A DNA stretch of 46,809 bases from assembly GCA_043228905.1 (NCBI GenBank), contig JBHGNT010000236.1:1-46809 (forward strand), given 5' to 3'. Below are positions 10,087 to 46,809 of this stretch, piece after piece; within the stretch, counting starts at the first letter, position 1, and each line of letters opens with the position of its first letter. Both the position numbers and the translations under genes were made by a program. The notes below the pieces were generated by a model. The model made no database searches, was not told the DNA's origin, and was given only the letters and a program-made list of their open reading frames with translations. This DNA comes from Azolla caroliniana (Eukaryota > Plantae > Polypodiophyta).

Positions 10087-10526
<440 letters not shown>

Positions 10527-23555: not shown

Positions 23556-24944
23556 TCATCCCGAGCGAGAATTGGCAGGGATTCCAATAAGAGTAGTATT
23601 CTCTTCAAGATGAGACATGGTCCGCATACCTACTAGAGTAGCCAATACCCCAGGTGTGGTTCTTGCAAATTGGATTGCACATTGTGCATTGGTACGATTC
23701 TCCCCGAGTTCAGGAAACTTGGCACGGATATCAGGATTCAAGCTCCTTGTCAAATACCCGTTATCCAAGCTCGATGACGCTATGACTGAGAGGCCAAGAT
23801 GATGGGCAGCATGGAAAAGAGGCATCCGTTTGCCTCGTATAGCTTGAGTGGGTTGGTTCGCCGCCTCTTGAAGCTTCCCATTGTAAGGTGCTTGGACAAC
23901 CTTGAAATGATGGCCTTCTCCGGCAATCTCCTTCGCGTACGACATGAGCTCTTCGAGAGGCAGGTGTTGTTTCCCGCTCGAGTTCACGCGGAACGCATTC
24001 CATGTGGCCACACCATACGCGGTGATCTTCCCTTCGGAACACAACTCTTCCATCGCTTGGAAAGCCCCTTTCATCCGGCCCAACACCGTCGACCTCGACA
24101 CCATGTTGAGTTGCGTCTCGGGGTTGTGCACAAAGTAAATGTCGATGGTCTCGAGCCCGAGATTGCGCCGGCTGACCTCGACCTGGTTCTTGAGGAACGC
24201 GGGCGAGAGGCAATGGCAACCGCCGACGAACTCCTCCCGAGTGAAGAGATTCGTGTTGATATACTTGTTGTCGATGTAGGTGTAAGGATCGATGTCTTCT
24301 CTATAATCGAACGAGAGGAAGCCGGCTTTGGAGCAAATGATGACCTCGTTACGGCTGATCACGCCTTGCTTGATGGCAAGGGAGATGCATTTCCCGAGCG
24401 CGAGCTCGCTGTGCATGGTGCGATAGTTGGATGCGCAATCGATTAGGTTAAGGCCAAGGGACATACCTCTGGTGAGGGATTCGACATATTCGCGATCGCA
24501 GATGTCGGTCTCGGGGCCGCCGTAGGTGCCCATGCCGATGGAGGAGAGGACGAGGTCTCCGACCGTGCCGCCCAGGCGGAGGCTGCGGAAGTGTCCGGGG
24601 GCCGCCCGGGCCCCGATCTTCCGGGCGAAATTGGCGGTCCCGGCGGCGTCAGCGTGGCCAGGTATGAAATCGGAGGGACCAGGCGTGGGGGTGGGGGAGA
24701 CCGACGCTGCCGCAGAGGAGGTAGAATAAGAATGGCCCTGTTGTTGCTTCGTTGCTTCCAAGATGGAGGAGGAGGAGGAAGAAGAAGAAGACAGGCCGAT
24801 GCTACCTTGTCTGCTCCACTGAGAAGAAGACGAAGGAGAAGGAGAAGGAGAAGGAAGCGCCATTTCTCTGAGGCCTCTGGATGCTAATAGCGAGGACTGA
24901 GAAGATGAGCGCCGGAGGGCTGTGCGTGCAGCTTGGAAGGCCAT
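23556..24944 (-). CDS. Intronless aldo/keto reductase, prokaryote-type subfamily, with N-terminal organellar (likely mitochondrial) presequence, 462 aa
   Basis: First in-frame ATG at 24944 (GCCATGG context). The longer ORF-track start is non-ATG and runs through a GAA repeat. AKR motifs: LSSIGMGTY, GLNLIDCASNY (catalytic Asp/Tyr), EVIICSKAG (Lys), SRRNLGLETIDIYFVHNPE (His), EGKITAYGVATW, TLVGMRTMSHLEEN. The N-terminus is rich in Arg, Ser and Ala (MAFQAARTALRRSSSQSSLLASRGLR). Confidence 0.92.
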   Translation of the reverse strand: MAFQAARTALRRSSSQSSLLASRGLREMALPSPSPSPSSSSQWSRQGSIGLSSSSSSSSSILEATKQQQGHSYSTSSAAASVSPTPTPGPSDFIPGHADAAGTANFARKIGARAAPGHFRSLRLGGTVGDLVLSSIGMGTYGGPETDICDREYVESLTRGMSLGLNLIDCASNYRTMHSELALGKCISLAIKQGVISRNEVIICSKAGFLSFDYREDIDPYTYIDNKYINTNLFTREEFVGGCHCLSPAFLKNQVEVSRRNLGLETIDIYFVHNPETQLNMVSRSTVLGRMKGAFQAMEELCSEGKITAYGVATWNAFRVNSSGKQHLPLEELMSYAKEIAGEGHHFKVVQAPYNGKLQEAANQPTQAIRGKRMPLFHAAHHLGLSVIASSSLDNGYLTRSLNPDIRAKFPELGENRTNAQCAIQFARTTPGVLATLVGMRTMSHLEENTTLIGIPANSRSG

Positions 24945-25042
24945 GGCTAATCGAATTCCTCTGCAGCAGCTATGAAAGAAAGGGAGAGAAGCTCTGTTCT
25001 TTCTTCTGATCTTCTTCTTCTTCTTCTTCTTCTTCTTCGCCA

Positions 25043-25079
25043 AAACCCTAGTGGCTCAATGAAGTGTGGACTAGGGTTT
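25043..25079. promoter_or_regulatory. Pair of telo-boxes in inverted orientation upstream of the AKR gene
   Basis: AAACCCTAGT at 25043-25052 and ACTAGGGTTT at 25070-25079, adjacent to the (TTC)n tract at ~25010-25038. Confidence 0.55.
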
Positions 25080-30453: not shown

Positions 30454-33122
30454 ATGGCGCCTCAGATGAGTAACCTTCGTCATCTCCTCCGGTCCACGTA
30501 CCCTTGTCTCGCATCTTCGTCGACTTCTTTCTCTTCCTATCAAGCTTTGTCTTCCATATCTGCCAGATCCTTTTCGTCTTCTTCCTCGTCTGAGGAGGAT
30601 ACCACTCCTTTCACTGTGGAAATTGCAGTGCCATTCAAAGGCCACAACATCGAACCACCATCTCAGACCTCTGAGACTTCACCCAAGGAGGTTCTCGGAT
30701 TCTTCAGAGACATGTCTCGGATGCGAAGGATGGAGATCGCAGCAGATCAGCTATACAAATCGAAGCTCATCAGAGGTTTCTGCCATCTCTACGATGGCCA
30801 AGAAGCCATCTGCATAGGTATGGAGGCTGCCCTAACTCGCCAGGACAACATCATCACCGCTTACAGAGACCATTGCACGTACCTTGGGCGTGGAGGAACA
30901 CTGAAGGAAGTGTTTGCAGAGCTGATGGGTAGAAAAGATGGGTGTACACTAGGGAAGGGAGGATCTATGCATTTTTATAAGAAAGAGAACGGTTTCTATG
31001 GTGGACATGGAATTGTTGGAGCTCAGATACCCCTTGGTGTCGGTTTGTCATTCGCACAGAAGTATGACAAGGTAAGAGCAGCCACGTTTGCGCTCTACGG
31101 TGATGGTGCAGCCAACCAAGGACAACTGTTTGAATCCCTCAACATTGCAGCCCTCTGGGATCTCCCTGCGGTCTACATTTGCGAGAATAACCATTGTGAG
31201 GGATTCTTTTTCTTCTGCTTTGCTTTGATTTACTTAAATTTTTTTTTGATGAAGAGGGATAGATAGATAGCATGGGTATATTTATGACTTTGGTGTCTGG
31301 TGCAAACTGCCTTTCTGCTTGCTGAGAGAGAGAGATGTATAGGATGGAACTCAAACATGGTTTTTCTCTCGAGTTATGAATTTGACGCGACAATGTAAAC
31401 TGCCAATGTGAGATAGAGATTAACGTCCATGGGATTGGACTTGGGTTCCCTCAATTTTATGAATTGAATGGTACAGTGTAAGCCACAAAGATAACAGCCA
31501 GAGAGAGAAAGAGAGACTACTAATGTCCATGAGAAACTGAATACAATGTATGGGATGGGGCTAGGCCCATGGCGAGGAGCAAACTTGAGTTTCCTGGATC
31601 GGATGACTGAATTTGATGCTTGGCATGGGGCCAAACCTGTTGTGAGGATCAAACTTGGGTTTCCATGGTAAAATATAAAGCACAAAGACAACAGAGGGAT
31701 TATTAATGTGTGTGTGTACTTGGGTAAGAGACTCTCGTTGTAACAGAGCGTAACAGAGCGTAAATGTTTGTGGGCCTTATCTTTATTGAACCATGATTTA
31801 GGTTAATTCACATTTTATTTTGCCTATATATTTATTCTGGAATTTAATTGAACCATGGTGTGGTTTGGATACCATTAGATGGTATGGGAACTGCAGAATG
31901 GAGAGCAGCCAAAAGTCCAGAATATTACAAGCGTGGTGACTACGTCCCTGGTTTGAAGGTATATAATAATGGGAGTGGTCTGTTAGCATTTGGAATAGAG
32001 CATAAAGTAGCTTTACATCATGTGGTCTCAGGTTGATGGCATGGATGCATTTGCTGTGAAAGAAGCTATAAAGTTTGCCAAGGAATATGCTCTTTCGAAA
32101 GGGCCGATCGTAAGTTAAAATTCCCAATTTCAATATTCGCAAGACAGTTTATGAACAAAATGATGGATAATTATATATTATTGGAAGTAGAAGATTCTTT
32201 GGTAACTAGTGGGCAATCTTATGTTCAAGTTCCATCACTTTTCTTAAGCTACATGATCATCTAGGCGTAAAGGGAAGGAGAATCTTATACACATTGTGGC
32301 ATGCATATAAGGTGAAATCACATATTTATCCTAGGAATTTGATATATGAAGTGTTTTTTGTATGAAATTGACAGATGCTCGAGATGGATACATATAGGTA
32401 CCATGGTCACTCTATGTCAGACCCTGGAAGTACTTACCGAACCAGGGATGAGATTTCGGGTGTCCGACAGGTTAGCTTGTGGTTATAATAAACAATGTTT
32501 TATTGTTCATTTCAGAATGAAAGCAAATTTTTGCCATGTTTGAACTACAGGAGCGTGATCCTATTGAGAGGATTAGGAAACTTATCCTTGGAAAAGAGAT
32601 TGCCACGGTCGCTGAGTTGAAGGTACAGTGTTTATTATTGGTATTAATTATTAAATTATATTTGCCAAGATGCTGATTTCCATTAAGATTGCTTTTACTA
32701 TTCTAAGTAATTTGTTACCTTCCACTGCAGAACATCGAAAAGGAGGTGAAAAAAGAGGTCGAGGATGCAGTGGCTGAAGCAAAGGTAATTTAAAGAATTC
32801 AAAATTTTACATATTTGAGAGGACAACTTATCATTTATTACTTACGCCCAATATGGATTTGATCGGATGATGTTGATCTCTCGCCAAATGAAATGTTGTT
32901 GTAGGAGAGTCCTCAACCTGATCCTTCGGAGCTCTTTGCAAATGTGTATGGGAAAGGTTATGGCACTGAGGTAAGAGTATTGCCGTATCACTAAGTCCCA
33001 TGATATCGATGATTTTTTAATTTTTTTCTAATTATGATAGAAGAAATTCCTAACTATTCATGTATCCTTGGGTGCAGGTTTTTGGTTGTGATAGCAAGAC
33101 TTCCTATGCTGTTATACAATAA
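30454..33122 (+). CDS. PDH-E1 alpha: Pyruvate dehydrogenase E1 component subunit alpha, mitochondrial, 410 aa
   Basis: Exons 30454-31195, 31879-31958, 32032-32109, 32375-32470, 32551-32622, 32731-32784, 32905-32970 and 33078-33122 total 1233 nt, all GT-AG. Motifs: [23 protein letters not shown]-binding [10 protein letters not shown]...CENNHYGMGT, kinase site [15 protein letters not shown]. Ser/Arg-rich presequence. Confidence 0.97.
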
Positions 33123-33721
33123 AAACAACAGTTGATAAAGATGGTTGTTTTTATGTGATGTCAATTGAACTTACATGAATGATGTGCAGGATTGCACACG
33201 CGAATTAGATGGTGAATAACATGATAAAGATTTTGCACACACTCTTGGTGTATAGTAAATTTTCATCCTTTTGTCTCTTAATACAGGCTAATAAGTGTGA
33301 GGATGCTCACTGTCATTTTTCAAGAATGAAATAAAATCTTCCCAAGTATTATATGTTGATGTATGATTATGATTTGTGGGTTATCCCATCTTCGTCAGAA
33401 TTGATAATAAAAATGATCTCCTTGACTTCATAGTCATGATAGGTGTTCATCTTGCGCTTCTTTGAAAATAGAAATTTTCTAGAAACAAAGACCTGCTAAA
33501 TATGAACGAACATTTATTTGATGTTACCATTGCTTTCCATATATTACTTTATAGTTTTATATGGTAAAACATAATATCTACTGATCCATATTATAATCAC
33601 CTGATTCTATTTATTTTCTTCTTTAGAGAATGAAGCAACATCACTAAATGGTATGCATGTAGAATTCCATTGTTTTGTTGTCTTGGAGGTCAGGGGTAAA
33701 CCATTGTTTGTGTGGAAGGAA

Positions 33722-33920
33722 CTTTGAAACATATTAGATGAAGATTCTCGTGCCTTGTAGTAGTTATGTCTAGAAGTTCGCATTCTAGTTTCAATCGCAA
33801 TGAAATCAATTTAAATCTACTCTTAGTCTAGATCTCAAATCCTATTTCGAATGCGAACTTCTCTTTTTATATCTTTGAAACATATTAGATGAAGATTCTC
33901 GTGCCTTGTAGTAGTTATGT
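33722..33920. repeat. 48-bp perfect direct repeat enclosing a 91-bp segment with 14-bp perfect inverted ends
   Basis: Direct repeats at 33722-33769 and 33873-33920. Inverted repeats AGAAGTTCGCATTC (33772-33785) and GAATGCGAACTTCT (33849-33862). Confidence 0.85.
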
Positions 33921-35618: not shown

Positions 35619-35692
35619 CTCTAGATGGCGTAGTTGGTTATCATGCTAGTCTTACACAATTGAGGTCTTCAGTTTGCGTCTAGGTTTGGACA
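35619..35692 (+). pseudogene. tRNA-Val pseudogene (TAC, probably mutated CAC), first array copy
   Basis: 74 nt with a recognisable D-arm. The anticodon and T stems are disrupted. Confidence 0.75.
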
Positions 35693-35785
35693 AGTAAAGA
35701 TGCTACTTACAACGATGAGAGTGTTTTGCTCTTTTCTGAAATGACAACTTGAATTTCAATGTAGTCTTTTATTGAATGTATTGTT

Positions 35786-35859
35786 GACCGAACGGTGTAG
35801 TTGGTTATCACACTAGTCTAACACACTAGAGGTCTCCGGTGCAAGTCCAGGTTTGGACA
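35786..35859 (+). pseudogene. tRNA-Val(AAC) pseudogene
   Basis: Perfect anticodon arm CTAGT-CTAACAC-ACTAG. The T-loop (TGCAAGT) and acceptor stem are mutated. Confidence 0.8.
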
Positions 35860-36424
35860 AGCAAAGATGCTACTTACAACAAGGAGAGTGTTTTGAACTA
35901 TTGTTTTCCGAATTGACATCTTGAGTAGACCCAAGTGTAATCACTTTAATTAAAATTCATCTCAGCAAATATTCAAATTGTGTCCAGATGCTGTAGTTGG
36001 TTATCATGCTCGTGTCACAGGAGTCTCACACACTAAAGGTATCCAATTCGAATCCTAGGTTGGACAAGTAAAGATGTTATTCACACCAAGGAGAGTGTTT
36101 TGCTCTTTTCCGAAATGACATCTTGAATTTCTACTAAGAAAAGTATATTGTTGCATAGATCCAAGCTACTTACCAAATGCAATCACATTGCTGATCAGAT
36201 GTGTAGATGGTGTAGTTGGTTATCAGGCTAGTCTAACACACTAGAGGTATCCAATTCAAATTTGGGTTTGGACAAGTAAAGATGCTACTCAGAACAAGGA
36301 GAGTGTTTTGCTCTTTACCGAAATGACATCTTGAATTTCTACTAAGAAAAGTCTTTTATTGAATAGATCCAAGCTGCTTACTAAATGCAGTCACTTTGCT
36401 GATACAATAAAGCATTATTGAAAT

Positions 36425-36498
36425 GTCTAGATTGCGTAGTTGGTTATCACGCTAGTCTAACATGCTAGAGGTCTCCGGTTCATGTCCGGGTCTAGACA
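36425..36498 (+). pseudogene. tRNA-Val(AAC)-like copy with well-paired stems
   Basis: Acceptor GTCTAGA/TCTAGAC is perfect and T-stem TCCGG/CCGGG is intact, but the T-loop TTCATGT lacks A58 (B-box broken). Confidence 0.8.
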
Positions 36499-37256
36499 AG
36501 TCAAGATGCTACCTACAATGAGGAAAGTGTTTTGAACCATTTTTTTCCTAATTGACATCTTGAAAGAAGAAAAGTCTTTAATATTGAATAGATCCTAACT
36601 GCTTAGCAAATAATCATTTTAGCAATACAACAATGTATTACCGAAATCTCCAGATGGTGTAGTTAGTTGTCGCACTAGTCTAACACACTAGAGGTCTTTG
36701 GTTCAAGTTCGGGTTTCGACAAGAAAATATGTTAATTAGGATGAGCAAAATGATCGGTATCGTTCCTTGGTGCCCATGTTGTAGAAACATCCAAATCGCT
36801 TTGGTCTAATTAGCAAATTCATCATCGTAGATGTCCATGAAATTGATTTTCACAAAGGGTCCAGGTGGTGTTGTTGGTTATCCATTAGTGCTATCTTGTT
36901 CTTCTATCTAAAAAGAACATAGTCACAAAGACTTCATGAAGCCAAATGCCACTACCACTTGTCAAACTTACAAACACATGGTGCCCATGTAGTAGAAATT
37001 CCAAGTTCAGGTTTGGATAAGAAAATATGCTAATTAGAATGAGTAGGATGATTGGCACCGTTCATTTTTTTGTAAATAATAGTCATTTATTCAATCAAAC
37101 TATGCGCAACTCATGCATGTATCGTAAGTAAAGAAGAAAGAAGTCTTCATTTCTTGTGTCCATTAAAGCTATCTTTTTCTATTTAAAAAGAATGTAGTCA
37201 CAAAGATTACCAAATTCATGTCAGTAGATGTCCATGAAATTAAATTTCACAAATGG

Positions 37257-37330
37257 ATCCAGATGGTGTACTTGCTTATTATGCTAGTCTCACACACTGG
37301 AGGTCTCCGATTCGAGTCCGAGTTTGGAGA
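37257..37330 (+). pseudogene. tRNA-Val(CAC) pseudogene
   Basis: Anticodon arm CTAGTCTCACACACTGG and T-loop TTCGAGT. The D-loop and G53 are mutated. Confidence 0.78.
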
Positions 37331-38036
37331 AATAAATATGCTACACGCTAGTCTAACACACTAGAGGTCTCCGGTTTGAGTCCGGGTTTGGACAAGTAAA
37401 GATGTTACTTACAACGATGAGAGTGTTTTGAACTATTCTTTTTCAAATTGACATCTTCAATTTCTGCCAAAAATGTCTTTTATGTGATCCAAACTACTTA
37501 CCAAATGTAATCATTTAGTGAAAAAAGAAAATATATATTTGAAATGTCTAGATGGGGTAGTTGGTTATCATGTCTAACACACTAGAGGTCTCAAGTTCAA
37601 ATCTAGGTTTGGACAAGAAAAGATGCTAGGTTTGGACAAGAAAAGATGGTATTTACAATGAGCATTATATTAATTAAACAATAGTCATATATTCAATGAA
37701 ACTATGTGTAGCTCAATCATGCATGTATTCTAAGCAAAGAAGAAAGGTGTAGTTGGTTATCATGTCTAACACACTATAGGTCTCAGGTTCAAACTTGGGT
37801 TTGGACAAGAAAATATGCTAATTACAATGAGCAAAATTATATTAATTAAATAACAGTCATATATTCAATCAAACTATGTGTGACTCAACTCATGCATGTA
37901 TCTTAAGCAAAGAAGAAAGAAGTCTTCATTTCTTCCATCCATTAAAGCTGTTTTTTTTTTATATCTAAAATGACGTAGTCACAAAGAATAGCAAATTCGT
38001 CTTAGTAGAAGTTCATAAAATTGACCTAACAAATGG

Positions 38037-38110
38037 CTCCAGATGGAGTAGTTGGTTATCACACTAGTCTCACACACTAGAGGTTTCCAGTTGGAGTCTG
38101 GGTTTGGACA
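38037..38110 (+). pseudogene. tRNA-Val(CAC) pseudogene
   Basis: Perfect anticodon arm CTAGT-CTCACAC-ACTAG. The T-loop TTGGAGT is mutated. Confidence 0.8.
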
Positions 38111-40241
38111 AGTAAAGATGCTACTTATAACAAGGAGAGTTTTTTGAGCTATTATTTTCCGAATTGACATCTTGAATTTTTGCTAAGAAAAAGTCCTTTA
38201 TTGATTAGATCCAAGCTACTTACAAAATACAATCACTTTGGTAATGCAACAATATATTCTCGAAATGTCCAGATGGTGTAGTTGGTTATCACGCTAGTCC
38301 AAACACACTAGAGGTCTCCACTACAAGTCTTGGTTTGGATAAAAAAGATGCTAATTAGAGTGAGGACAATGATACTTTTGTAAATAATAGCTATTATTCA
38401 ATCAAATTATGTGTAACTCAACTCATGCATGTATCGTAACGAAAGCAAAAAGAAGTCTTCATTTCATGCCTCCATTAAACCTACCTTTTTCTATATAAAA
38501 AGAATATAGTCACACGATTAGTACATGCCTATAAAATTTATTTTCACAAATGGGTCCACATGATGTAGTTGGTTATCATGCTAGTCTCACACGTTGGAGG
38601 TCTTTGGTTTGAGTCCCTTGTTTGGACAAGTAAATATGTTACTTACAATGCAAAGAATGTTTTAAACTATTTTTTTCTGAATTATCACCATGGTCTCACA
38701 CACCAGAGGTCCATGGTACGATTATGGATTTGGACAAGTAAAAATGCTAATTACAACCAAATGAAATGTAGTTGGTTATCACATTAGTCTCACACACTAG
38801 AGGTCTCCAGTTCGAGCTTGGGTTTGGACAAGTAAAGTTGCTACTTACAACTGGGAGAGTGTTGTTTTAAACTATTCTTTTCCGAATTGACGTCTTGAAT
38901 TTCAGCTAAGAAAAGTCTTTTATTGAATATGTCCAAGCTACTTACCAAATGCAATCACTTTGGCAATATTGCTAGAAGTATTATGGGCAACAACATTGCA
39001 AAACTTGATTCTTTGGGAAAAGGTAAATCGCGAAAAGGAGAGGTTTCATTGTTAATATCAACTACCTAACCAAGGAGAGTTAACAAAACTACTTGATTAA
39101 TGAAATTTCTTGAAGAATCCTTTTTATTTATGACACTATTTGGTGTTTTTTAAATAGTCTCCTCACAATTTTTTTTATGTTTGATAGGATTCAAAAATTT
39201 ATTTGGATAGTACCACCACGAAAAATGCAGTCAACGGTTAGAAAGTAAATACGAAACATGTAAGATGTTGTGAAACCGGTTGTGATAGCTACCACATTAG
39301 AATCTATTGGATTTTTTTTGTTCAGATTCGCTTTTTGGGAGTAAACTGATTGGGAATCAAATTACACAATCATGGATGGCTAGCCTAGCAATAAGCTAAA
39401 CCACAAGATAATTTCTAAAAAAGATGTGAATTTAGATTCATTCACAAATTTAAAAATGAAAGAATATGTGTAATATATCAAGTTGATGTATCATTTTTTT
39501 AAATAAAGACGAATGTATTATTGAAATGTTCAGATGGTGTAGTTGGTTATCAAGCTAGAGATCTCCGGTTCAAGTATGGGTTTGGACAACAAAAAATGCT
39601 AATTAGCATGAGTAGAAATTAGAATGATTGACACCAATTTTGTAAACTATGTGCAACTCATGCATGTATCTTCTTCATAAGCAAAGAAGAAAGAAGTCTT
39701 CATTTCTAGCCTCCATTAGTGCTATCTTTTTCAAAATAAAAAGAATGTAGCCACAAAGACTCCATGGAGCTAAATGCCACCACCACTTGTCAAACTTACA
39801 AACTCTTGTTTCCCATGTAGTAGAAACATTCCAATCAAGTCCTCATTTTTTGCCTCCTAATAGCGCAATCTTTTTCTATCTAAAAAGAATGCATTCACAA
39901 ACACCTCGTGGAGCTAAATGGCACTACAACTTGTCAACCTTACAAACTTGTATTGCGCATGTAGTAGAATCATTCCAATCCCTTTCTTCTAATTAGTAAA
40001 TTCACCTTAGTACCCTCAAATGGGTCTAGATGGTGTAGTTGGTTATCGTGCTAGTCTCACACACTAGAGGTCATTGGTAGTCCGAGTTTGGACAAGTAAA
40101 CATGGTAATTAAAACGAGGTGACTGTTTTGAACTATTCTTTTCCAAATCGACATCTTGAATTTCTTCTAAGAGAAGTCTTTTATTGAATAGATCCAAGCT
40201 ACTTACAAAGTCTGATCAATGTACCAACTTATTCTTGAAAG

Positions 40242-40315
40242 GTCCAGGTGGTGTAGTTGGTTATTATGCTACTCTAACACACTAGAAGTCTTCGGTTCGA
40301 GTCCAAATTTGGACA
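40242..40315 (+). pseudogene. tRNA-Val(AAC)-like copy with intact A and B boxes
   Basis: TGGTGTAGTTGG and GGTTCGAGTCC are retained. Mismatches in the anticodon stem (C-C) and T-stem. Confidence 0.72.
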
Positions 40316-40425
40316 ATTAAAGATGCTACTTACAACATTTTGAATTTTTTATAAGAAAAGTCTTTTATTGAATAGATCCAAGCTACTTACTAAATCCAAT
40401 CAATGTACTAATGTATTCTTGAAAG

Positions 40426-40499
40426 GTCCAGATGGTGTAGTTGGTTATTATGCTACTCTAACACACTAGATGTCTTCGGTTCAAGTCCGAGTTTGGACA
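40426..40499 (+). tRNA. tRNA-Val(AAC)-like copy, the best-preserved in the array, possibly still a pseudogene
   Basis: Acceptor GTCCAGA/TTTGGAC and T-stem TTCGG/CCGAG pair, and the A box and B box (GGTTCAAGTCC) are intact. The D-stem is weakened (G-U pairs) and there is one C-C mismatch in the anticodon stem. Confidence 0.5.
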
Positions 40500-41289
40500 A
40501 TTAAAGATGCTACTTACAACCAGAAGCTATTCTTTTCCGAATTGACATTTTGAATTTTTTATAAGAAAAGTCATTTATTGAATAGATCCAAGCTACTTAC
40601 TAAATTTGATCAATGTAGCAACATATTCTTCAAAGGTCCAGATGGTGTTTTTGGTTATTATGCTACTCTAACACACTAGAAGTCTTCGGGTCGAGTTCGG
40701 GTTTGGACAATTAAAGATGCTACTTACAACCAGAAGTTATTCTTTTCTGAATTGACATTTTGAATTTTTTATAAGAAAAGTCTTTTTATTGAATAGATCC
40801 AAGCTACTTATTAAATACAATCTTTTTAGCAACAACAATATATTATTGAATTGTTCAGATGGTGTAGTTGGTTATCACGATAGCCCAACACTAGTTATCT
40901 TGAATTTCTACTAAAAGCAATCTTTTATTGAATGGATCCAAGCTAGCTGCCACAACACAATCGCTTTGGCAGCATTTCCAATTTTGTTTTAATGGATCTA
41001 TGTGCAATTCAATGATTTATTGTCAACAGGTTTAGATGGTGGTGTTGGTTATCATGCTAATCTAACCCACTCGAGGTCTTTGAATCAAGTCTGGATTTGG
41101 ACAAGTAAAGATGCTAATTAGAATGAGCAAAATGTAAGGCATTGTTCTTGACAGAATTGACATGTTCTAATTTTGTAAATAGTAGTCATAAATTTAGTCA
41201 AACTATGTGTAACTCATGCATTCATCGTAAGCAAAGGAAAAAGAAGGGTTCATTTCTTGCCTCCAATATGGTTGTCTTTTTCTTTTACG

Positions 41290-41661
41290 TCAAATTAATT
41301 AACCATTTACGTCAAATTAATTAAAAATCTAAATAAACAAAAATACATTAAATTCAATAAGCATTTAACTTAAATTTAAAAAAAAACTTTAATTAAACCA
41401 TTAAATTAAATAAATATTTAAGTTAAACTAATAAAATCAATAAAAAACCATTAAATTAATAAACTATTAAGGTGAAAAAAAACAGTTAACCAAAAACCAA
41501 TAAAGCTTTAAACCGATAAACCTGAGTTTTAGGACCAAACCGAACCGAAACTGAACCATTTATTAAAAGTTCAAACCATTATTATTTGTTGGGACCAATA
41601 AACCGTTAAACATGGCTTAATGGTTCGGTTCGGTTCGAGCCGAAAACCGTGCTCATCGCTA
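41290..41661. mobile_element. Truncated hAT-like MITE (AACCG-repeat type)
   Basis: AT-rich body with clustered AACCG/CGGTT subterminal repeats (41510-41650), ending in GTGCTCATCGCTA. Its reverse complement TAGCGATGAGCAC resembles TAGGGATG/TAGGGGTGAGC-type plant hAT MITE termini. No partner end was found. Confidence 0.55.
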
Positions 41662-42690: not shown

Positions 42691-46391
<3,701 letters not shown>

Positions 46392-46479
46392 GTAATAATG
46401 TTGCTATGTTATTAACTTAAACACATTGCCAAATAAGGTTAGAAACCACAATAGAATATTCCATGAAACAAATATCCAA

Positions 46480-46809
46480 TGGACTATATTGTCTTCTCAA
46501 AAAGAACTCTAAAGGTAAATCCTGGAAGGTGTATAGTAGAAGGTCATTTAAACTTAAGACAAGCATACAGATATTGTCTCCTCAAAGAGCACGCAGACAC
46601 AAATTCTTGAAGTTGTATAGCGGAAGGTTGTTTAACCTTAGACAATTATATACAGTCATTGTTTCTTTCTAAAAAAGGAACTCAGAAAATCTCTTGAAAT
46701 TTTGTAACAGAAGGTTGTTTATTAACCTTTGACGATCATATACATATTTTCTCCTTCTAAAAGAGAACTCAGAAATATCGTAGAAGTTGTATAGCAAAAG
46801 GGCATTTAA
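46480..46809. repeat. Degenerate ~85-90 bp intronic tandem repeat, about 4 copies, running off the window
   Basis: Recurring CTCxTCTAAAAGAGAACTCAGAAA...TTGAAGTTGTATAGCAGAAGGTxxTTTAA...TAGAC...ATACA unit. Confidence 0.7.

What the first reader, a model, noticed from the sequence alone, without database searches (positions are those of the whole stretch)
35619..41103. 5.5 kb head-to-tail array of ~23 tRNA-Val-derived units between two housekeeping genes
Seen: ~17 near-full-length and ~6 partial 74-nt tRNA-Val copies, all on the + strand, typically ~180-300 bp apart, between PDH E1-alpha and ASP1. The spacers are themselves homologous, so gene plus flank was amplified as a unit. Established: tandem tRNA clusters occur in plants (Arabidopsis tRNA-Pro and Tyr/Tyr/Ser clusters, largely methylated and silent), and tRNA-plus-repeat arrays exist in Entamoeba. 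I do not recall a described tRNA-Val array of this kind in ferns. Inference: this is a tRNA gene cluster turning into a satellite. It could act as a TFIIIC/Pol III boundary element, a source of tRNA-fragment or siRNA species, or a SINE precursor.
Basis: partly seen in the sequence, partly recalled or inferred. Interest (0 to 1): 0.85.

Follow-up and report, generated by a model that had tools for sequence, protein, structure and literature searches.

The report
Decayed tRNA-Val tandem array in Azolla
A water fern (Azolla) carries 23 worn-out, head-to-tail copies of a valine tRNA gene pair between two ordinary genes; it is a dead example of the tRNA gene clusters already known in plants, and arrays like it may inflate this genus's very high tRNA gene counts.

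Summary
The array is real: 23 plus-strand tRNA-Val-derived copies (16 near full length, 7 partial) at 35619-41103, between mitochondrial PDH E1-alpha and aspartate aminotransferase, most likely in Azolla caroliniana. Three DNA runs tile it at single-copy depth. The amplified unit was a gene pair: Val(CAC)-spacer A-Val(AAC)-spacer B. No copy is intact (6-14 changes from the intact gene). Changes concentrate at CG (30%) and CHG (24%) versus CHH (6%), the footprint of methylation. At A/T sites the tRNA bodies decayed as much as spacer A (5.8% each) and a 530-bp plastid insert (4.4%); B boxes are not protected. An Azolla metagenome contig holds a piece of the same ancestral array (same plastid junction) in other flanks, with one perfectly kept Val(CAC) gene identical to the inferred ancestor. 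No SINE hallmarks. Verdict: a methylated, neutrally decaying tRNA pseudogene cluster, a new member of a known kind; boundary, small-RNA and SINE roles have no support. This scan noted similar Asp, Trp, Glu, Ala, Tyr, Arg, iMet and other Val arrays elsewhere in this genome (unchecked). Its value is as a testable explanation of Azolla's reported >7,500 tRNA genes.

The parts
35619..41286 (+). Whole array: 23 tRNA-Val-derived copies with spacers A and B
35619..35692 (+). u01, decayed copy (anticodon reads TAC), followed by shortened spacer A
35786..35859 (+). u02, AAC copy, T8 and T-loop changed
35982..36066 (+). u03, CAC copy with 11-nt insertion, T arm broken
36201..36274 (+). u04, AAC copy, B box broken; sister of u03
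36425..36498 (+). u05, AAC copy, best Rfam score (44.9 bits), T-loop invariant A lost
36648..36721 (+). u06, AAC copy followed by spacer B
36859..36884 (+). u07, 5' fragment (26 nt)
37257..37330 (+). u08, CAC copy after spacer B
37344..37394 (+). u09, 3' two thirds, AAC
37546..37615 (+). u10, AAC copy with 4-nt deletion in the anticodon stem
37746..37807 (+). u11, 5'-truncated AAC copy sharing u10's deletion
38037..38110 (+). u12, CAC copy, T-loop C lost; with u13 the best match to the L002 dimer
38111..38266 (+). Spacer A, complete example (~150 nt, T4 run near +30)
38267..38341 (+). u13, AAC copy, B box broken
37808..38036 (+). Spacer B, complete example (~230 nt; ends in a CAA-containing motif just before each CAC copy)
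38554..38628 (+). u14, CAC copy
38682..38736 (+). u15, 5'-truncated CAC copy
38767..38830 (+). u16, 5'-truncated CAC copy
38967..39288 (-). Plastid insert part 1: ndhF fragment, inside spacer A of u16
39289..39497 (+). Plastid insert part 2: ccsA 3' end and following spacer, joined to ndhF at a junction shared with L002
39528..39588 (+). u17, anticodon arm deleted
40024..40094 (+). u18, CAC copy, 3-nt deletion in B box
40242..40315 (+). u19, AAC, A and B boxes kept, anticodon and T stems mismatched; part of later sub-array u18-u21
40426..40499 (+). u20, AAC, least damaged copy (6 changes, boxes kept, anticodon-stem mismatch)
40636..40709 (+). u21, AAC, A and B boxes broken
40853..40893 (+). 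u22, 5' half only
41030..41103 (+). u23, AAC, most decayed, followed by spacer B
30454..33123 (+). Flanking gene: mitochondrial pyruvate dehydrogenase E1-alpha (only exon 1 searched; end read from the sequence)
42691..46809 (+). Flanking gene: mitochondrial aspartate aminotransferase, ASP1-like (only exon 1 searched; runs off the window)

Best explanation
An old tandem cluster of tRNA-Val pseudogenes. A working cytosolic tRNA-Val(CAC) gene was duplicated; the copy changed its anticodon to AAC (and G to A in the T loop) and got a different 3' flank, giving the cassette CAC-spacer A-AAC-spacer B. The cassette was amplified head to tail in one main burst, probably by unequal crossing-over or slippage using the near-identical tRNA bodies as homology, which also yields the AAC-spacer A monomers and fused half copies (mechanism inferred). 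A plastid ndhF/ccsA fragment was captured in one spacer, and soon after a piece of the array ended up in other flanks (L002). The copies were methylated at CG and CHG (inferred from the mutation pattern), silenced, and decayed without selection; a few damaged units were copied again later (u03-u04, u10-u11, u18-u21). Today it most likely makes no working tRNA and has no sequence-specific job.
For: Shown: consensus folds as a full cloverleaf and equals the intact L002 gene except at one decayed CpG and the anticodon. All 16 full copies carry 6-14 changes; all but u10, u19, u20 lose an invariant base, and those three have stem defects. Deamination at CG 44/147, CHG 29/122, CHH 28/498 (p<1e-7). 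A/T-site change: tRNA 5.8%, spacer A 5.8% (p=1.0), plastid insert 4.4% (p=0.46). B boxes intact 3/20 vs 5.2 expected. Dimer: 4/4 copies after spacer B are CAC, 7/7 after intact spacer A are AAC (p=0.003), and L002 shows the same order. Star-like tree. Shared ndhF|ccsA junction and 7 shared derived changes in window and L002. Known parallel: clustered Arabidopsis tDNAs are methylated and silent (PMC7544208).
Against: tRNA bodies changed less than spacers at CHH sites (10% vs 16%, p<0.01) and less than spacer B at A/T sites (5.8% vs 10.6%); this may come from majority consensuses hiding decayed CG/CHG sites and from only six indel-rich spacer B copies, or from an early phase of selection. u19 and u20 keep both promoter boxes and could still bind TFIIIC. 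Methylation and silence were not measured. The amplification mechanism is not observed.
Confidence: 0.85

Rival explanations
1. Chromatin boundary or TFIIIC/Pol III platform that insulates the PDH and ASP1 genes, with or without making tRNA.
For: Lies in a 9.5-kb gap between two housekeeping genes, 1.4 kb before the ASP1 start; u19 and u20 keep A and B boxes; present in a second labelled organism.
Against: B boxes not kept above chance (3/20 vs 5.2); A box changes as often as the rest of the body (16/248 vs 62/875); heavy CG/CHG decay argues for long-term methylation; two other species of the same study hold none of the sampled words (weak).
Confidence: 0.05
2. Tandem array of a tRNA-derived SINE or SINE precursor whose units also occur as dispersed retrocopies.
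For: Related sequences exist elsewhere: 360 contigs lay on the array in run X1, most under 99% alike, depth over tRNA parts up to ~19-fold, and joints in other orders recur in all three runs; L002 has the cassette in unrelated flanks.
Against: No A-run of 7 or more and no flanking duplication; the head is a complete, real tRNA; L002 carries a multi-unit piece plus the plastid junction, which is DNA-level copying, not a Pol III transcript. The extra depth is also expected from ordinary Val genes and other Val arrays.
Confidence: 0.05
3. A partly active reserve cluster (like the Arabidopsis Ser-Tyr-Tyr cluster, reactivated in some cells) supplying variant tRNA-Val or tRNA fragments.
For: u20 has only 6 changes, keeps boxes and has a T4 run at +34; reactivation of a plant cluster is reported (cited in PMC13437025).
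Against: u19-u21 share an anticodon-stem mismatch and were copied after damage; no copy approaches the perfect conservation of the L002 gene; no RNA run holds the units (poorly suited data).
Confidence: 0.05

Closest known systems
Arabidopsis Ser-Tyr-Tyr and Pro tDNA clusters (PMC7544208; PMC13437025)
   Same: Compact head-to-tail cluster of a multi-gene module duplicated with its flanks, copies at the same module position more alike, intergenic, CG/CHG methylation
   Different: Val CAC/AAC pair in a fern; every copy is damaged, whereas the Arabidopsis clusters keep mostly intact genes
Plant same-amino-acid, different-anticodon tandem tRNA pairs, including Val (PMC12652284)
   Same: Neighbouring isoacceptors differing by very few bases, arisen by tandem duplication and anticodon change
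   Different: Here the pair became the repeat unit of a 23-copy array; that survey has no fern
Azolla filiculoides tRNA gene excess: >7,500 genes, >10,000 tRNA-like sequences (PlantRNA 2.0, 10.1101/2021.12.21.473619; PMC13578239)
   Same: Same genus, many tRNA-like pseudogenes and organellar inserts
   Different: Those papers ascribe the excess to genome duplication and repeat content and suggest a growth benefit; tandem pseudogene arrays are not described there; the species differs
Plant tRNA-derived SINEs (own knowledge)
   Same: tRNA-related head followed by unrelated DNA, many relatives in the genome
   Different: No tail, no target-site duplication, complete tRNA head, tandem and DNA-level copying
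Entamoeba tRNA-STR arrays (own knowledge)
   Same: Tandem units with tRNA genes
   Different: Those are homogenised, functional and very long with short tandem repeats in the spacers; none of this holds here

Membership tests
Plant tandem tDNA cluster | Five or more tRNA genes within 5 kb (Hummel et al. 2026) | tested here: met
   6-8 Rfam hits above cut-off and 23 homologous copies in 5.5 kb; only 4 by ARAGORN; none fully intact
Plant tandem tDNA cluster | One or few isotypes, same orientation, module duplicated with flanks | tested here: met
   All Val, all plus strand, CAC-A-AAC-B module
Plant tandem tDNA cluster | Derived from a real cytosolic tRNA gene | tested here: met
   Inferred ancestor equals intact L002 gene, 61 bits
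Plant tandem tDNA cluster | DNA methylation and silencing | tested here: inconclusive
   Only the mutational footprint; no methylome, no suitable RNA data
Functional tRNA genes | Intact cloverleaf with invariant bases, under purifying selection | tested here: not met
   6-14 changes per copy; decay equal to spacer A and plastid insert
tRNA-derived SINE | A/T-rich or simple-repeat tail | tested here: not met
   No A-run of 7 or more in the array
tRNA-derived SINE | Target-site duplication | tested here: not met
   Best shared word between the flanks is 6 nt in AT-rich DNA, not at the ends
tRNA-derived SINE | Dispersed single copies genome-wide | not testable with these tools
   Relatives exist elsewhere but the genome could not be searched; the one locus seen (L002) is an array piece
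Satellite DNA | Long, homogenised head-to-tail array | tested here: not met
   5.7 kb, 79% mean identity, irregular units; TRF finds only 2-copy runs
TFIIIC boundary element | Conserved B boxes with TFIIIC binding | tested here: not met
   Sequence side only: 3/20 intact vs 5.2 expected; binding not testable

The most novel reading that the evidence does not exclude
Azolla has a lineage-specific, tRNA-gene-driven DNA amplification process (for example breakage or circle formation at Pol III genes) that expands tRNA cassettes in tandem, captures plastid DNA and seeds pieces at new sites where a single gene can be kept, sometimes with a switched anticodon; this, and not genome duplication or growth demand, would explain the genus's thousands of tRNA genes.
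Probability: 0.2. Interest if true: 0.62.

Novelty: new member of a known kind. Interest (0 to 1): 0.3.

Why it matters
Little as a single locus. As a worked case it bears on a stated puzzle: a 2026 review lists Azolla filiculoides with more than 7,500 tRNA genes, ascribes this to genome duplication and repeats, and suggests a link to fast growth (PMC13578239). Here standard tools still-8 of 23 dead copies tRNA genes, so arrays like this can inflate counts without adding decoding capacity. The locus also records an anticodon change (CAC to AAC) in a gene pair before amplification and gives an internal control: one perfectly kept sibling gene beside decayed ones. I found no paper describing tRNA arrays in Azolla, within a library that lacks most subscription journals.

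Tried and rejected
Misassembly or collapse: rejected, spacers at single-copy depth and tiled in three runs (X1 may be the source sample). Single-monomer unit: rejected, two spacer families. Apparent compensatory stem changes (12 pairs) not taken as selection, because C>T on one arm and G>A on the other of CCGG stems both arise by deamination. T-loop position 58 was first counted as CpG decay, then excluded because it separates CAC from AAC-spacer B copies (6/6 vs 6/6). Other RNA families: none credible. Synteny in Adiantum and Ceratopteris: no DNA returned. Placing L002 by its RT-like ORF: not on record. Using between-sample differences as a selection test: dropped, only 40 of 165 rows shown and tRNA parts are masked by paralogs. 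Flanking genes were searched by first exon only; the joined spliced proteins were not built or searched. The plastid insert was searched in pieces between stops. Loose-end letters have no reference, so they were compared by eye with plastome text and not sent to any tool.
Full report
Observation. A profile built from the four best copies finds 23 tRNA-Val-derived copies and one 18-nt scrap between 35619 and 41103, all on the plus strand and none elsewhere in the window. Sixteen are near full length and seven partial. Spacing is mostly 167-300 nt. ARAGORN accepts 4 and Rfam 6-8. The neighbours are mitochondrial PDH E1-alpha (exon 1, best named hits in ferns) and mitochondrial aspartate aminotransferase (exon 1). 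Contigs from three DNA runs tile the array with 0-2.5% differences; spacer contigs have the same depth as the flank (61-77 vs 63 in X1), so the array is neither collapsed nor invented, though no one contig spans it. One run is labelled as a second organism, so the array is older than that split.

Organism. A stretch at 38967-39497 has read depth up to about 200 times single copy in runs X2 and X3 and matches Azolla plastomes: an ndhF piece joined to the ccsA 3' end. It is closest to the plastome with the A. caroliniana ndhG (89%, versus 88% and 87%), and the plastid loose end in run X2, labelled as the window's organism, matches that plastome exactly and differs from the others. PDH DNA is 89% identical to that of a sample with an A. 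filiculoides plastid and 86-92% to other metagenome copies. The window is Azolla, most likely A. caroliniana (inference).

Unit. Spacers fall into two families, A (~150 nt) and B (~230 nt). All four anticodon-bearing copies that follow spacer B are CAC, and all seven that follow an intact spacer A are AAC (p=0.003); T-loop position 58 is G in CAC copies and A in AAC copies followed by B. The amplified unit was therefore CAC-A-AAC-B, a reading first suggested by note s1-497503 and tested here. AAC-A monomers and fused half copies fit crossovers inside the tRNA bodies (inference). The consensus of the AAC type differs from the CAC gene only at the anticodon, position 58 and three CG/CHG sites, so the AAC gene was probably a sound cloverleaf when amplified: an anticodon shift on a CAC body. 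The tree of tRNA+spacer A units is star-like, with two later groups (u03-u04, u18-u21); u10-u11 share a deletion and u19-u21 an anticodon-stem mismatch, so damaged units were copied again.

State of the copies. The consensus folds as a complete tRNA, but every full copy has 6-14 changes, and all but u10, u19 and u20 have lost an invariant base; those three have stem defects. C>T/G>A changes hit 30% of CG, 24% of CHG and 6% of CHH positions, the pattern left by MET1- and CMT3-type methylation (established knowledge; Arabidopsis clusters are methylated this way, PMC7544208). At A/T sites tRNA bodies and spacer A both changed 5.8%, and the plastid insert, a neutral yardstick that arrived later, 4.4%. 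B boxes survive in 3 of 20 copies against 5.2 expected. Against strict neutrality, tRNA bodies changed less than spacers at CHH sites and less than spacer B at A/T sites; consensus error in the spacers or an early selected phase could each explain this.

A sibling locus. A metagenome scan returned one contig, L002, from Azolla: its 2.7-kb ndhG-I-A insert is 99.9% identical to a plastome of the A. mexicana ndhG type. It holds a Val(CAC) gene identical to the inferred ancestor, then spacer A, a decayed AAC copy, part of spacer B and the same ndhF|ccsA junction, with 7 derived changes shared with the window. It is collinear with u12-u13 and the insert (85%) but lies in unrelated flanks, next to a decayed tRNA-Lys cluster. 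Both loci thus descend from one array that already had the insert, and a piece was moved or copied as DNA. The L002 gene has no change in the 39 positions not fixed by my search pattern, where window copies average 5.2 (P about 0.006): selection (or conversion from a working gene) kept it, and no window copy shows this.

Other copies. About 300 contigs below 99% identity lay on the tRNA parts, with depth up to ~19-fold and joints in other orders in all three runs: relatives exist elsewhere. There is no A-tail or target-site duplication. No RNA run holds the units, but these data cannot show tRNAs well.

Mechanism. Shown: real tRNA origin, dimer unit, decay pattern, plastid capture, shared ancestry with L002. 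Inferred: unequal crossing-over or slippage, methylation, present silence. Best reading: an old, silenced tRNA-Val pseudogene cluster in birth-and-death turnover (0.85). Boundary, SINE and active-reserve readings each get about 0.05.

Comparison and novelty. Compact clusters of duplicated tRNA modules are known in land plants (PMC7544208; PMC13437025), as are same-amino-acid, different-anticodon pairs including Val (PMC12652284). Azolla filiculoides is already known for more than 7,500 tRNA genes and more than 10,000 tRNA-like sequences, without arrays being described in the papers I could search. Unchecked notes of this scan list arrays of Asp, Trp, Glu, Ala, Tyr, Arg, iMet, Pro/Val and Val(TAC) in the same genome, several far larger. 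This locus is a new member of a known kind and one of many here. Interest 0.3, mainly because it makes the cause of Azolla's tRNA gene excess directly testable.

Noticed in passing
window 38967-39497: Chimeric plastid insert (ndhF fragment joined to ccsA 3' end, about 4.6 kb apart in the plastome), ~10% diverged from the nearest Azolla plastome, inside a spacer of the array.
   Followed up: yes
L002 1911-5063: Decayed cluster of cytosolic-type tRNA-Lys(TTT) copies on the minus strand, one well kept (71 bits), with duplicated flanks: another tRNA array in Azolla, 3 kb from the Val piece.
   Followed up: partly
L002 whole contig: Assembler coverage 61 and rank 291, whereas nuclear PDH contigs in assemblies with neighbouring accession numbers have coverage about 2; it could be multicopy or mitochondrial although it carries microsatellites, an RT-like ORF (446-1435), a ycf2-like piece and nuclear tRNAs. 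Unresolved.
   Followed up: partly
L002 5130-5205: A tRNA-like sequence on the minus strand (CCA anticodon by eye) not called by ARAGORN or Rfam.
   Followed up: no
window 41290-41650: High-copy element right after the array (depth about 65 times single copy in X1) with AT-rich repeats and 24-nt inverted AACCG-type arms; looks like a DNA-transposon or MITE remnant in the ASP1 upstream region.
   Followed up: partly
window 33722-33920: Exact 48-bp direct repeat enclosing a 14-bp inverted repeat, downstream of PDH: a small foldback insertion with an unusually long flanking duplication.
   Followed up: partly
window 23556-25043 (-): 495-codon intronless aldo/keto reductase ORF (Pfam PF00248); already noted by the scan as s1-497504.
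   Followed up: partly
window 10087-10526: AAAT microsatellite of 110 copies; nearby ORF 11607-12242 matches a cyclophilin.
   Followed up: no
window 46548-46801: 87-bp tandem repeat, about 3 copies, in an intron of the aspartate aminotransferase gene.
   Followed up: no
run X11: A run labelled as the window's organism carries plastid alleles like those of run X3 and unlike X1/X2, hinting at mixed species labels in Azolla.
   Followed up: no
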